Positions 33,990 through 35,428 are shown, counted from the whole stretch's first letter. The stretch is DNA of 63,933 nt, filler included, from Octopus bimaculoides (GCF_001194135.2; 5 parts of 5 records of this genome joined end to end with filler, not necessarily neighbours in it); one strand, 5' to 3'. Translations and numbers: made by a program. The notes: generated from the letters alone by a model not told the origin.

Positions 33990-35428
33990 ACCGTTCGTTT
34001 TCGCCAGGACGGATGTACGTTCACGCGAAACGAACGGACGTCATTTCACGCGAAACGAACGGACGTGCGTTCACGCGAAACGAACATACGCACGTACACT
34101 TCGTTTTCGCCAGGACGGACGTACGTTCACGTGAAACCAACGGACGTACGTTCACGCGAAACGACCGGACGTACGTTCACGCGAAACGAACGGACATACG
34201 TTCGCGCGAAACGAACGGACGTACGTTCACGCGAATCGAACGGACGTACGTTCACGCGAAACGAACGGTCGCACGTACCGTTCGTTTTCGCCAGGACGGA
34301 CGTACGTTCACGCGAAACGATCGGACATACGTTCAATCGAATAGAAAGGTTTAACGTACCTTTCGTTTTCACCAGAGCGGGCGTGCATTCACGCGAAGCG
34401 AACGGACGCACGTACCGTTCGTTTTCGCCAGGACGGACGTACGTTCAGGCGAAATGAACGGACGTACGTTCACGCGAAACGAACGGATGTAAGTTCACGC
34501 GAAACAAACGGACGCACGTACCGTTCGTTTTCGCCAGGACGGGCATGCGAAACGAACGGACGCACGTACCGTTACTTTTCGCCAGGACGGACGTACGTTC
34601 ACGCGAAACGAACGGACATTCGTTCACGCGAAACGTACGTAGCTTTTCGACCGAACGGGCGTACGTTCGTACGACCGAACGGGCGTACGTTCAGGCGAAA
34701 GCTACGGACGAAGCTCCGTAGCTTTTCGACCGAACGGACGTACGTTCAGGTGAAAGCTACGGACGAAGCTCCGTAGCTTTTCGACCGAACGGGCGTACGT
34801 TTAGGCGAAAGCTACGGACGAACCTCCGTAGCTTTTCGACCGAACGGGCGTACGTTCAGGCAAGAGCTACGGACGAAGCTCCGTAGCTTTTCGACCGAAC
34901 GGGCGTACGTTCAGGCAAAAGCTACGGACGAAGCTCCGTAGCTTTTCGACCGAACGGGCGTCCGTTCAGGCAAAAGCTACGGACGAAGCTCCGTAGCTTT
35001 TCGACCGAACAGGTGTACGTTCAGGCAAAAGCTACGGACGAAGCTCCGTAGCGATATTGCAACCAATTTCTTCTTCTTCTTCTTCACGCGAAGCGAACGG
35101 ACGCACGTACCGTTCGTTTTCGCCAGGCCGGACGTACGTTCAGGCGAAACGAACGGACTCACGTACCGTTCGTTTTTGCCAGGACGGAAGTACGTTCAGG
35201 CGAAACGAACGGACGCACGTACCGATCGTTTCCGGCAGGACGGACATACGTTTACGCGAAACGAACGGAGGCAGGTTCCGTTCGTTTTCGCCAGGACGGA
35301 CGTATGTTCACGCAAAACGAATGGACGCACGTACCGTTCGTTTCGCCAGGACGGACGTACGTTCACACGAAACGAACGGACGCACGTACCGTTCGTTTTC
35401 GCCAGGACGGACGTAAGTTCACGCGAAA
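33990..35428. repeat. Composite CpG-rich minisatellite: 25-bp unit A, 56-bp hairpin unit AB, 55-bp hairpin unit C
   Basis: A=GGACGTACGTTCACGCGAAACGAAC; AB=A+GGACGCACGTACCGTTCGTTTTCGCCAGGAC; C=GGGCGTACGTTCAGGCGAAAGCTACGGACGAAGCTCCGTAGCTTTTCGACCGAAC (six full copies 34681-35010 plus one partial). Confidence 0.95.

What the first reader, a model, noticed from the sequence alone, without database searches (positions are those of the whole stretch)
33990..35428. Hairpin-unit array with two variants related by three compensatory base-pair flips
Seen: unit AB folds as GCGAAA-CGAACGG-(ACGCACGTA)-CCGTTCG-TTTTCGC and unit C as GCGAAA-GCTACGG-(ACGAAGCT)-CCGTAGC-TTTTCGA. Both share the leader GGRCGTACGTTCA, the stem base and the inner ACGG/CCGT pairs, but CGA/TCG has become GCT/AGC: six substitutions that all preserve pairing. 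Unit length is held at 55-56 bp. C is not a simple inversion of the AB interior. The array is very CpG-rich in an AT-rich background. Inference: the structure rather than the sequence is being maintained, as in a structured-RNA or ssDNA/cruciform element. Quasi-palindrome template switching could produce the same covariation without selection.
Basis: partly seen in the sequence, partly recalled or inferred. Interest (0 to 1): 0.75.

Follow-up and report, generated by a model that had tools for sequence, protein, structure and literature searches.

The report
Quasi-palindromic CpG-rich tandem (mini)satellite repeat
This is a non-coding, CpG-rich tandem repeat in an animal genome whose units contain a short inverted repeat. 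Its two sub-families do differ by three matched base-pair flips, but these trace to one or two DNA-level copying events that were then amplified, so the array is an ordinary satellite with one neat wrinkle.

Summary
The sequence is as described. Window 33990-35428 is a 1.44-kb contig made only of tandem repeats, with a 10-N gap on its left and the end of the piece on its right. It has two hairpin-capable unit types, AB (56 bp) and C (55 bp). Their stems differ by CGA/TCG -> GCT/AGC, three adjacent base-pair flips.

The array is built from a 25-bp monomer M and a 31-bp block I that carries an inverted copy of M's 3' end. Only 34679-35428 has regular 55/56-bp hairpin units. In 33990-34611, hairpins are separated by 1-6 plain monomers.

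- Independent substitutions are unlikely to give the flips (P about 9e-4).
- All C units are clones of one event.
- Within each family, stems are no better conserved than non-stem positions, and every stem variant breaks or wobbles its pair.
- The unpaired loop acquired the same AGCT tetranucleotide as both arms.

This points to templated DNA copying (template switching or arm-to-arm conversion) followed by amplification, not to selection on a fold. There was no Rfam, Pfam, literature or collection match. The source organism was not identified; a mariner transposase ORF and very dense microsatellites suggest an invertebrate, but nothing tested settles this.

Verdict: a new member of a known kind, a satellite with dyad symmetry. 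Interest is low to moderate.

The parts
33990..34611 (+). AB-type sub-array 1, irregular. It consists of 25-bp monomers M (ACGGACGTACGTTCACGCGAAACGA) interrupted by 31-bp I blocks (ACGGACGCACGTACCGTTCGTTTTCGCCAGG). Order: M4 I M6 I M2 I M I M3 I x I M. A hairpin forms only at M-I junctions.
   Evidence: Tiling by edit distance; TRF periods 25, 56, 81, 106 and 181.
34612..34678 (+). AB-to-C transition made of truncated and hybrid units. One example is ACGCGAAACGTACGTAGCTTTTCGACCGA, which has an M-type left end and a C-type right arm. A 24-bp deletion derivative of a C unit is also present.
   Evidence: The fold is no better than shuffles (z = -0.95).
34679..35051 (+). C-type sub-array: 6.9 regular units of 55 bp, each Cm (ACGGGCGTACGTTCAGGCGAAAGCT) plus Ci (ACGGACGAAGCTCCGTAGCTTTTCGACCGA). 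The hairpin of the first unit lies at 34696-34728.
   Evidence: TRF 55 bp, 95% matches; tiling; fold -16.3 kcal/mol, z = -4.0.
35052..35082 (+). Unrelated spacer inside the array: GATATTGCAACCAATT followed by a (TTC)n microsatellite.
35083..35428 (+). AB-type sub-array 2, regular: 6.2 units of 56 bp (M plus I). It runs to the end of the piece. The cleanest hairpin is at 35367-35402.
   Evidence: TRF 56 bp, 87% matches; tiling; fold -13.9 kcal/mol.
33880..33960 (+). GC-rich cluster of three short hairpins in the 5' flank, across the 10-N gap. The first, TATTTCGCC-TGCG-GGCGAAATA, re-uses the TTTCGCC/GGCGAAA motif of the array's second dyad. Whether it belongs to the repeat is uncertain.
   Evidence: DNA fold -24.4 kcal/mol, z = -2.9. 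The self-BLAST hit for 33880-33905 is an inverted repeat.

Best explanation
This is a non-coding tandem repeat, a GC- and CpG-rich mini- or micro-satellite family, in an animal genome.

Its basic unit is a 25-bp monomer M. At some point an inverted copy of M's 3' end (GCGAAA(A)CGAACGG) was created just downstream. This gave the 31-bp block I, and with it a 56-bp higher-order unit M+I that contains a 13-bp interrupted palindrome. The hairpin or cruciform potential is therefore a by-product of an inverted partial duplication made at the DNA level.

The C family descends from that same M+I unit. It shares the architecture, the leader, the inner ACGG/CCGT pairs and even the extra-T bulge (AAA opposite TTTT).

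In the founder of C, a clustered mutation (CG->GC plus a neighbouring base, giving AGCT) was copied by templated repair or replication onto the other arm and into the loop. The likely mechanism is template switching in a quasi-palindrome, or arm-to-arm and sub-repeat conversion. That single unit was then amplified to about 7 copies by unequal exchange or slippage (concerted evolution).

Which steps are shown and which are inferred:
- Shown: the anatomy, the common descent of AB and C, the clonal nature of the C copies, and the absence of a pairing constraint within families.
- Inferred: the specific templated-copying mechanism, and the absence of function.
For: - Architecture M/I and Cm/Ci, all on the + strand.
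- I equals M's head followed by the reverse complement of M's tail. The whole unit is largely self-complementary, with two dyad centres (pair I1; alignment of the unit against its own reverse complement).
- AB and C are 78% identical, co-oriented, and share the bulge.
- Independent substitutions are an unlikely source of the flips: P(3 or more compensated pairs) = 9e-4.
- The C copies are near-identical clones, 95% matches. This leaves only two covariation events, and the number of pairs with a double change is not above shuffles, 206/500.
- No purifying signal on the stems: Fisher p = 0.45 and 0.51, and 0 compensated against 16 broken or wobble pairs within families.
- All three places changed in C, including the unpaired loop, became AGCT (direct reading).
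- Variants are concentrated at CpG sites: 8.0% per site against 3.0%, a difference I did not test for significance. This may reflect faster decay at CpG.
- Nothing coding and no known RNA: no Pfam hit for the array ORFs, no protein homologues, no Rfam family.
- Template switching is documented to create and repair perfect stems and to give multi-base compensatory changes in one event (PMC8794818).
- Concerted evolution and dyad symmetries are standard features of satellites (PMC8122249).
Against: - Only one 1.4-kb array was available. No other genomic copy could be retrieved, so no intermediates and no tree of units exist to show the order of events.
- GCT/AGC does not occur anywhere in AB. 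Template switching alone therefore cannot create it, and an initial three-base cluster mutation must be assumed.
- The inner 13 bp of the palindrome are perfect, while the outer parts of the putative inverted monomer match at only about 70%. This could also reflect selection on the inner stem.
- The extra-T bulge survived, so any arm-to-arm copying tract must have been short.
Confidence: 0.6

Rival explanations
1. The dyad symmetry is under selection as a DNA structure. On this reading the repeat is a centromeric, pericentromeric or other chromatin-organising satellite. Its hairpin or cruciform (non-B-form DNA) would be what the cell recognises, so sequence may drift provided the arms stay complementary.
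For: - Dyad symmetry is kept between two families that are 22% diverged, with three flipped pairs and no broken inner pair.
- The inner 13 bp are perfect while the outer inverted similarity has decayed.
- A second compensated pair (C-G to A-T) occurs in the decayed unit at 34321-34375.
- Short dyad symmetries are enriched in centromeric satellites of many taxa and were proposed to have been selected (PMC5889037; PMC13081366).
Against: - Within families, stems are not more conserved than non-stem positions, and variants break pairs freely.
- About 40% of the array lacks an inverted partner.
- The 8-9-nt loops are long for cruciform extrusion (general knowledge).
- The AB hairpin is not more stable than composition-matched shuffles, z = -1.4.
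- The loop changed to the same AGCT as the arms.
- The array is only 1.4 kb in the assembly, and its chromosomal position is unknown.
Confidence: 0.17
2. The array is transcribed, and each unit folds into an RNA hairpin. It would be a structured non-coding RNA, or a precursor of hairpin-derived small RNAs, with the covariation reflecting selection on the RNA fold.
For: - RNAalifold finds an 11-pair consensus helix, and 4 of its pairs show a double change.
- 89% of cells are paired.
- The + strand of the M+I array is free of stop codons and other obvious interruptions, which shows only that long transcripts are not excluded.
Against: - No Rfam family reaches threshold. The only hit in the array is a 24-bit glutamine-riboswitch match, E = 0.36, below the 35-bit gathering score.
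- G.U-type changes are not favoured: 5 wobble against 11 broken.
- The covariation term is small, -1.1 of -13.98 kcal/mol.
- The covariation is two events only.
- A palindrome is equally 'structured' on both strands, so it carries no strand signal.
- No promoter or processing signal was identified, and expression data are unavailable.
Confidence: 0.07
3. The array is the internal or sub-terminal tandem-repeat block of a mobile element, for example a Helitron/Helentron-type non-autonomous element or a foldback-type element. The hairpin cluster at 33880-33960 would then be part of the element's end.
For: - A GC-rich cluster of three short hairpins lies directly upstream of the array and re-uses the TTTCGCC/GGCGAAA motif.
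- Dispersed short arrays carried by such elements are described in invertebrate satellitomes (for example PMC8268682, listed; I read only the abstract).
Against: - No transposase or Rep/helicase ORF lies next to the array. The only transposase in the piece is a mariner fragment 4.4 kb away.
- There is no second copy of the flank or of the repeat in the 26-kb piece.
- No inverted sub-array exists, since all units are on the + strand.
- The flank is joined through a 10-N gap, so adjacency rests on scaffolding alone.
- No repeat library (Repbase or Dfam) was available for a test.
Confidence: 0.1
4. The AB-C-AB arrangement, or part of the unit variation, is an artefact of assembling a collapsed repeat, and the real locus looks different.
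For: The array is a 1.44-kb all-repeat contig between a 10-N gap and the end of the piece. The scaffold has eight larger estimated gaps. Junctions contain truncated hybrid units and an odd spacer.
Against: Both unit types are each present in 6-12 slightly different copies with coherent phase. This is not what read errors give. The existence of the two variants and of the triple flip does not depend on their order.
Confidence: 0.06

Closest known systems
Satellite or minisatellite DNA with internal dyad symmetry or inversely oriented sub-units. Examples are Tribolium madens TmSat1/TmSat2, the T. brevicornis major satellite, the Trichogramma 385-bp satellite, and the dyad-enriched centromeric satellites of Kasinathan & Henikoff.
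   Same: - Head-to-tail non-coding array.
- A higher-order unit made of a monomer plus an inverted (partial) monomer.
- A short inverted repeat able to fold back.
- Sub-families homogenised in blocks.
- No conservation outside the species, as far as could be searched (PMC13081366; PMC5889037; PMC8122249).
   Different: - The monomer is much shorter (25 bp; 55/56-bp higher-order unit) than typical insect satellites.
- CpG density is extreme (observed/expected 2.25).
- Only 1.4 kb is seen.
- Abundance, chromosomal location and centromere association are unknown.
- There are no orientation switches of whole sub-arrays (macro-dyads).
Template-switch mutations in quasi-palindromes (Ripley-type; Monttinen & Loytynoja 2022).
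   Same: The right arm is an exact reverse complement of the left arm across a multi-base change. Several adjacent pairs changed together. This is the pattern that study attributes to a single template switch (PMC8794818).
   Different: That work concerns RNA genes, where selection then filters the outcome. Here there is no evidence of an RNA product. The new bases (GCT/AGC) have no donor in AB, so an extra clustered mutation is required. The loop also acquired the motif in direct orientation, which calls for conversion or slippage between direct sub-repeats as well.
Rfam-type structured RNA families supported by covariation.
   Same: A helix of 11-13 pairs with compensatory double changes in an alignment of 18 units.
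   Different: The alignment rows are tandem paralogues, not orthologues. There are two events only, no stem conservation within families, and no Rfam match.
Viral homologous regions (hrs) of baculoviruses and nimaviruses, and prokaryotic CRISPR or REP arrays.
   Same: Tandem units that each contain an imperfect palindrome.
   Different: - There are no viral or prokaryotic genes nearby, and the context is a eukaryotic scaffold rich in microsatellites with a mariner fragment.
- IMG/VR gave no hit, and the bacterial, archaeal and metagenome collections gave only chance single hits.
- The 'spacers' between palindromes are themselves the same repeat, which is not CRISPR-like.

Membership tests
Satellite / minisatellite DNA | Head-to-tail tandem array of a short unit, all in one orientation | tested here: met
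   TRF periods 25, 55 and 56 bp. 27 motif matches, all on the + strand and all inside 33990-35428. Tiling.
Satellite / minisatellite DNA | Non-coding | tested here: met
   Array ORFs are periodic low-complexity peptides with no Pfam domain and no homologue among 5.8 billion proteins.
Satellite / minisatellite DNA | Block-wise homogenised sub-families (concerted evolution) | tested here: met
   C block 95% matches and AB block 87%. AB against C is 78% identical.
Satellite / minisatellite DNA | High copy number, or long arrays elsewhere in the genome | not testable with these tools
   The source genome is not available. There were no hits in the metagenome, genome, viral, protein or paper searches.
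Dyad-symmetric (non-B-form) centromeric satellites | Short inverted repeats within the unit, predicted to fold | tested here: met
   A 13-bp interrupted palindrome per M+I unit. DNA fold -13.9 kcal/mol (AB) and -16.3 kcal/mol (C). A second, weaker dyad is centred on ACGTACGT.
Dyad-symmetric (non-B-form) centromeric satellites | Folding beyond what composition gives | tested here: inconclusive
   C: z = -4.0. AB: z = -1.4, with 16 of 200 shuffles as good. M-only trimer: z = -0.6.
Dyad-symmetric (non-B-form) centromeric satellites | Centromeric location, CenH3 association | not testable with these tools
   No chromosome-level context. The array is at the edge of a gapped scaffold.
Structured RNA family | Match to a curated covariance model | tested here: not met
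   Rfam 15 scan at E <= 1. In the array there is only a 24-bit sub-threshold glutamine-riboswitch hit. All other hits are microsatellite artefacts.
Structured RNA family | Several independent compensatory changes with a deficit of pair-breaking changes | tested here: not met
   Two events only. Pairs with a double change number 4, a value reached by 206 of 500 shuffles. Within families, 0 compensated against 16 broken or wobble pairs, and the stem rate equals the non-stem rate.
Structured RNA family | Transcription | not testable with these tools
   No expression data.
Template-switch (quasi-palindrome) mutation product | The changed tract in one arm is the exact reverse complement of the other arm | tested here: met
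   GCTACGG / CCGTAGC in all C units.
Template-switch (quasi-palindrome) mutation product | The new sequence is derivable from a nearby donor in the ancestral sequence | tested here: not met
   AB contains no GCT or AGC on either strand (direct reading of the consensus). A prior cluster mutation has to be assumed.
Transposon-borne internal tandem array (Helitron/Helentron, foldback) | Element termini or coding capacity adjoining the array, with repeated flanks | tested here: inconclusive
   A hairpin cluster is present at 33880-33960. There is no adjoining transposase or Rep ORF, no second copy of the flank in the piece, and a 10-N gap lies between flank and array. No transposon library was available.
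CRISPR array | Constant repeats separated by unique spacers, in a prokaryotic context | tested here: not met
   The intervals between palindromes are the same 25-bp monomer. The context is eukaryotic.

The most novel reading that the evidence does not exclude
The repeat family is constrained to keep a fold-back structure while its sequence drifts. The structure could be a DNA hairpin or cruciform recognised at a centromere or other chromatin domain, or an RNA hairpin. On this reading, AB and C would be a natural example of base-pair covariation in satellite DNA. That would be direct sequence-level support for the idea that structure, not sequence, specifies satellite function.
Probability: 0.15. 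Interest if true: 0.65.

Novelty: new member of a known kind. Interest (0 to 1): 0.3.

Why it matters
If the ordinary reading holds, the array is one more species-specific satellite. Its value is as a compact worked example of how templated DNA copying followed by tandem amplification can imitate 'compensatory evolution'. That is a warning for covariation-based calls of structure in repeated DNA.

If the structural reading were true, the two sub-families would give a testable case for the non-B-form DNA hypothesis of satellite and centromere function. AB and C arrays could be compared directly for cruciform formation and protein binding.

Tried and rejected
**Searches for other copies all failed.**
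- The exact degenerate pattern found 0 matches in metagenome contigs.
- A looser hairpin pattern that allowed any stem triplet gave 3 single hits. All are unrelated bacterial hairpins with no M-like repeats.
- The bacterial and archaeal genome collection gave 2 chance hits.
- IMG/VR gave 0 hits.
- The translated array found no homologue in the protein database.
- An exact look-up of an array ORF and of the mariner ORF found nothing on record.
- Searching unit sequences in 8.3 million papers gave 0 hits.

**Organism identification failed.**
- The mariner ORF has only 60%-identical relatives, from Hydra, bees and a cuttlefish.
- A paper search with the SINE-like repeat sequence gave 0 hits.

**Readings rejected.**
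- C as an inverted AB: the forward alignment is better, and inverting a palindrome does not change its arms.
- Independent origin of the C hairpin from a C-type monomer array: AB and C share the extra-T bulge, the tail and the loop start.
- Protein-coding repeat.
- CRISPR, viral hr or rDNA spacer: no rRNA or other Rfam hit, no viral match, and a eukaryotic context.
- The first MAFFT alignment of whole units misplaced the 1-nt loop gap. It was replaced by a core alignment.

Full report
**Context.** The piece (9346-35428) is a eukaryotic, most likely invertebrate, scaffold.
- It is packed with microsatellites: (AC)n, (AG)n, (TA)n, (ATA)n, (ATGT)n.
- It is broken by eight estimated-size N gaps and two 10-N gaps.
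- It carries a mariner-type transposase fragment at 28789-29568 with Pfam Transposase_1 and HTH_48 domains. Its best relatives are 56-60% identical SETMAR-like proteins of Hydra, bees and a cuttlefish.
- The organism could not be identified.
- The finding's region, 33990-35428, is a 1,439-bp contig consisting only of repeat. It is joined to the flank by a 10-N gap and ends at the edge of the piece.

**Observation check.**
- The two unit types are present exactly as written.
- A tiling of the array by edit distance shows that it is built from four blocks:
  - M, 25 bp: ACGGACGTACGTTCACGCGAAACGA.
  - I, 31 bp: ACGGACGCACGTACCGTTCGTTTTCGCCAGG.
  - Cm, 25 bp, the C-type counterpart of M: ACGGGCGTACGTTCAGGCGAAAGCT.
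  - Ci, 30 bp, the C-type counterpart of I: ACGGACGAAGCTCCGTAGCTTTTCGACCGA.
- The order along the array is:
  - M4 I M6 I M2 I M I M3 I x I M (33990-34611).
  - Truncated hybrid units (34612-34678).
  - (Cm Ci) x 7 (34679-35051).
  - An unrelated spacer, GATATTGCAACCAATT followed by (TTC)n (35052-35082).
  - (M I) x 6 then M (35083-35428).
- The 55/56-bp hairpin unit therefore holds for the last 750 bp. In the first 620 bp most units are plain monomers with no inverted partner. TRF accordingly reports periods of 25, 56, 81, 106 and 181 bp there.
- All 27 matches to the shared core lie on the + strand inside the array, against 0 expected.
- CpG observed/expected is 2.25 in the array and 0.79 in the rest of the piece. 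GC is 55% against 40%.
- As single-stranded DNA, the AB unit folds into the predicted 13-pair stem with one bulged T (-13.9 kcal/mol). This is not exceptional for so CpG-rich a sequence: z = -1.4, with 16 of 200 shuffles as good.
- The C unit folds at -16.3 kcal/mol with z = -4.0. An M-only trimer gives z = -0.6.

**Anatomy and descent.**
- Block I begins like M (ACGGACGYACGT) and then continues as the reverse complement of M's tail plus the next ACGG: CCGTTCGTTTTCGC against GCGAAACGAACGG.
- The whole M+I unit aligns with its own reverse complement over most of its length. It has two dyad centres: the strong hairpin, and a weaker one centred on the ACGTACGT of M's head (pair I1).
- The palindrome is therefore the product of an inverted (partial) duplication of the monomer, a DNA-level event.
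- C is co-oriented with AB and 78% identical: 43/55 forward against 40/55 for the reverse complement.
- C has the same leader, which is polymorphic C/G at one site within AB too (units at 34433, 35128 and 35184).
- C also has the same inner ACGG/CCGT pairs, the same stem base, and the same extra T (AAA opposite TTTT).

**Is the flip more than chance?** Yes. AB and C consensus differ at 15 of 56 positions. Seven of those lie in the stem, and six of the seven form the three complementary flips. In 2 million simulations of 14 independent substitutions, three or more compensated pairs occurred with frequency 9e-4.

**Is it evidence of selection on structure?** Five observations say no, or at least not yet.
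1. The C units are near-identical clones (95% matches), so the triple flip is one event.
   - The only other compensated pair is C27-G41 -> A-T in the decayed unit at 34321-34375, where four other pairs are broken.
   - On the 18-unit core alignment, 89% of cells are paired. The cell-based measures beat all shuffles, as clonal rows will.
   - The event-type measure, pairs with a change on both sides (4), is reached by 206 of 500 shuffles.
2. Within families, stems are not protected. AB has 12/234 stem substitutions against 18/256 non-stem (p = 0.45). C has 5/144 against 4/186 (p = 0.51).
   - Every affected stem pair in the exact-length units is broken (11) or G.T (5), and none is compensated.
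3. G.U-compatible changes are not favoured, so there is no RNA signature.
4. About 40% of the array has no hairpin at all.
5. The three places where C differs from AB in the hairpin region all changed by CG->GC and all became the same tetranucleotide AGCT (alignment).
   - These are the left arm (ACGA), the unpaired loop (ACGT) and the right arm (TCGT).
   - A pairing constraint does not predict a parallel change in the loop. Copying between short direct and inverted sub-repeats does.

**Mechanism proposed.**
- An inverted partial duplication of M created M+I.
- In one unit a clustered mutation produced AGCT. It was then spread to the partner arm and to the loop by templated synthesis or repair: template switching in a quasi-palindrome, or conversion between sub-repeats.
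- That unit was amplified to the C block by unequal exchange or slippage.
- Both families then accumulated variants. The per-site rate is higher at CpG sites than elsewhere (8.0% against 3.0%, a difference I did not test for significance).
- Template switching is documented to create perfect stems and multi-base compensatory changes in a single event (PMC8794818).
- Concerted evolution and dyad symmetries are standard satellite features (PMC8122249).
- Weak points of this mechanism:
  - GCT/AGC has no donor in AB, so an initial three-base cluster must be assumed.
  - The bulge survived, so conversion tracts were short.
  - The inner 13 bp are perfect while the outer inverted similarity is about 70%, which selection could also explain.

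**Rivals.**
- Selection on a DNA fold-back, as proposed for dyad-rich centromeric satellites (PMC5889037; Tribolium macro- and micro-dyads, PMC13081366). It remains possible, at about 0.17, but needs location and genome-wide variant data.
- An RNA hairpin role. It has no support beyond the palindrome itself, and Rfam is negative.
- A transposon-borne array. The GC-rich triple-hairpin cluster at 33880-33960 hints at this, since its first hairpin re-uses TTTCGCC/GGCGAAA. No coding partner, repeated flank or library match could be shown.
- Assembly artefact. This can affect the order of blocks but not the existence of the two variants.

**Comparison with the known.**
- By its defining features (tandem, one orientation, non-coding, block-homogenised sub-families) this is a satellite or minisatellite.
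- It resembles satellites with internal dyad symmetry or inversely oriented sub-units. It differs in its very short monomer, its extreme CpG density and its unknown abundance and location.
- It is not a member of any Rfam family, not a CRISPR array and not a viral hr.
- No copy was found in any collection or paper searched. The particular family is therefore undescribed in those resources, which is usual for species-specific satellites.

**Verdict.** This is a new member of a known kind, with interest 0.3. The most novel reading not excluded is structure-constrained satellite evolution, at a probability of about 0.15.

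Noticed in passing
window 28789-29568 (+): A mariner/Mos1-type transposase fragment of 259 aa with Pfam HTH_48 and Transposase_1 domains, truncated relative to its ~340-aa relatives. The best hits are only 56-60% identical (SETMAR-like proteins of Hydra, bees and a cuttlefish). It marks the piece as animal DNA.
   Followed up: yes
window 28482-28700, 10999-11180, 21941-22017 (-), 29547-29579: A dispersed SINE-like repeat. 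Two long copies are 88% identical, each lying next to a microsatellite or a gap, and short fragments flank the mariner ORF. No match was found in the papers searched.
   Followed up: partly
window 13150-13383 and 13864-14097: A long inverted repeat with arms of at least 230 bp, 91-98% complementary. Its centre falls in the 452-N gap at 13412-13863. It is either a foldback-type element or a palindromic assembly artefact.
   Followed up: partly
window 22283-22747: A 23-bp minisatellite (ATGGTCATCCTCTGGTCATCCAC, about 20 copies, with 46-, 79-, 148- and 192-bp higher orders). It keeps long ORFs open (GHPLVIHMVILWSS-type repeats) and is probably non-coding.
   Followed up: no
window 33880-33960: A GC-rich cluster of three short perfect hairpins in otherwise AT-rich flank DNA, just before the 10-N gap and the array: TATTTCGCC-TGCG-GGCGAAATA, GCAATTGC, and CCAACCC-T-GGGTTGG. 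The first hairpin looks like the array's second dyad (TTTCGCC...GGCGAAA) with its interior deleted.
   Followed up: partly
window 34679-35051 (each C unit): The self-complementary AGCT occurs three times per C unit, in the left arm, the loop and the right arm. AB has ACGA, ACGT and TCGT at the same three places. This means three parallel CG->GC changes, one of them at an unpaired position. It also allows alternative 4-bp pairings.
   Followed up: yes
window 34321-34375: A strongly decayed AB unit with 12 changes. It carries a compensated pair (C27-G41 -> A-T, arms GAAAGG/CCTTTC) alongside four broken pairs.
   Followed up: yes
window 35052-35082: An unrelated spacer of about 31 bp (GATATTGCAACCAATT followed by (TTC)n) separates the C block from the second AB block. 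The AB unit after it carries the same GAAGCGA variant as the unit at 34376-34432.
   Followed up: no
window 9346-33979 generally: Microsatellite density is very high and many arrays abut N gaps. Sub-threshold Rfam 'mir-297/mir-466/mir-3149' hits all lie on (TA)n, (AC)n or (ATGT)n-type simple repeats (or beside one) and are artefacts.
   Followed up: yes
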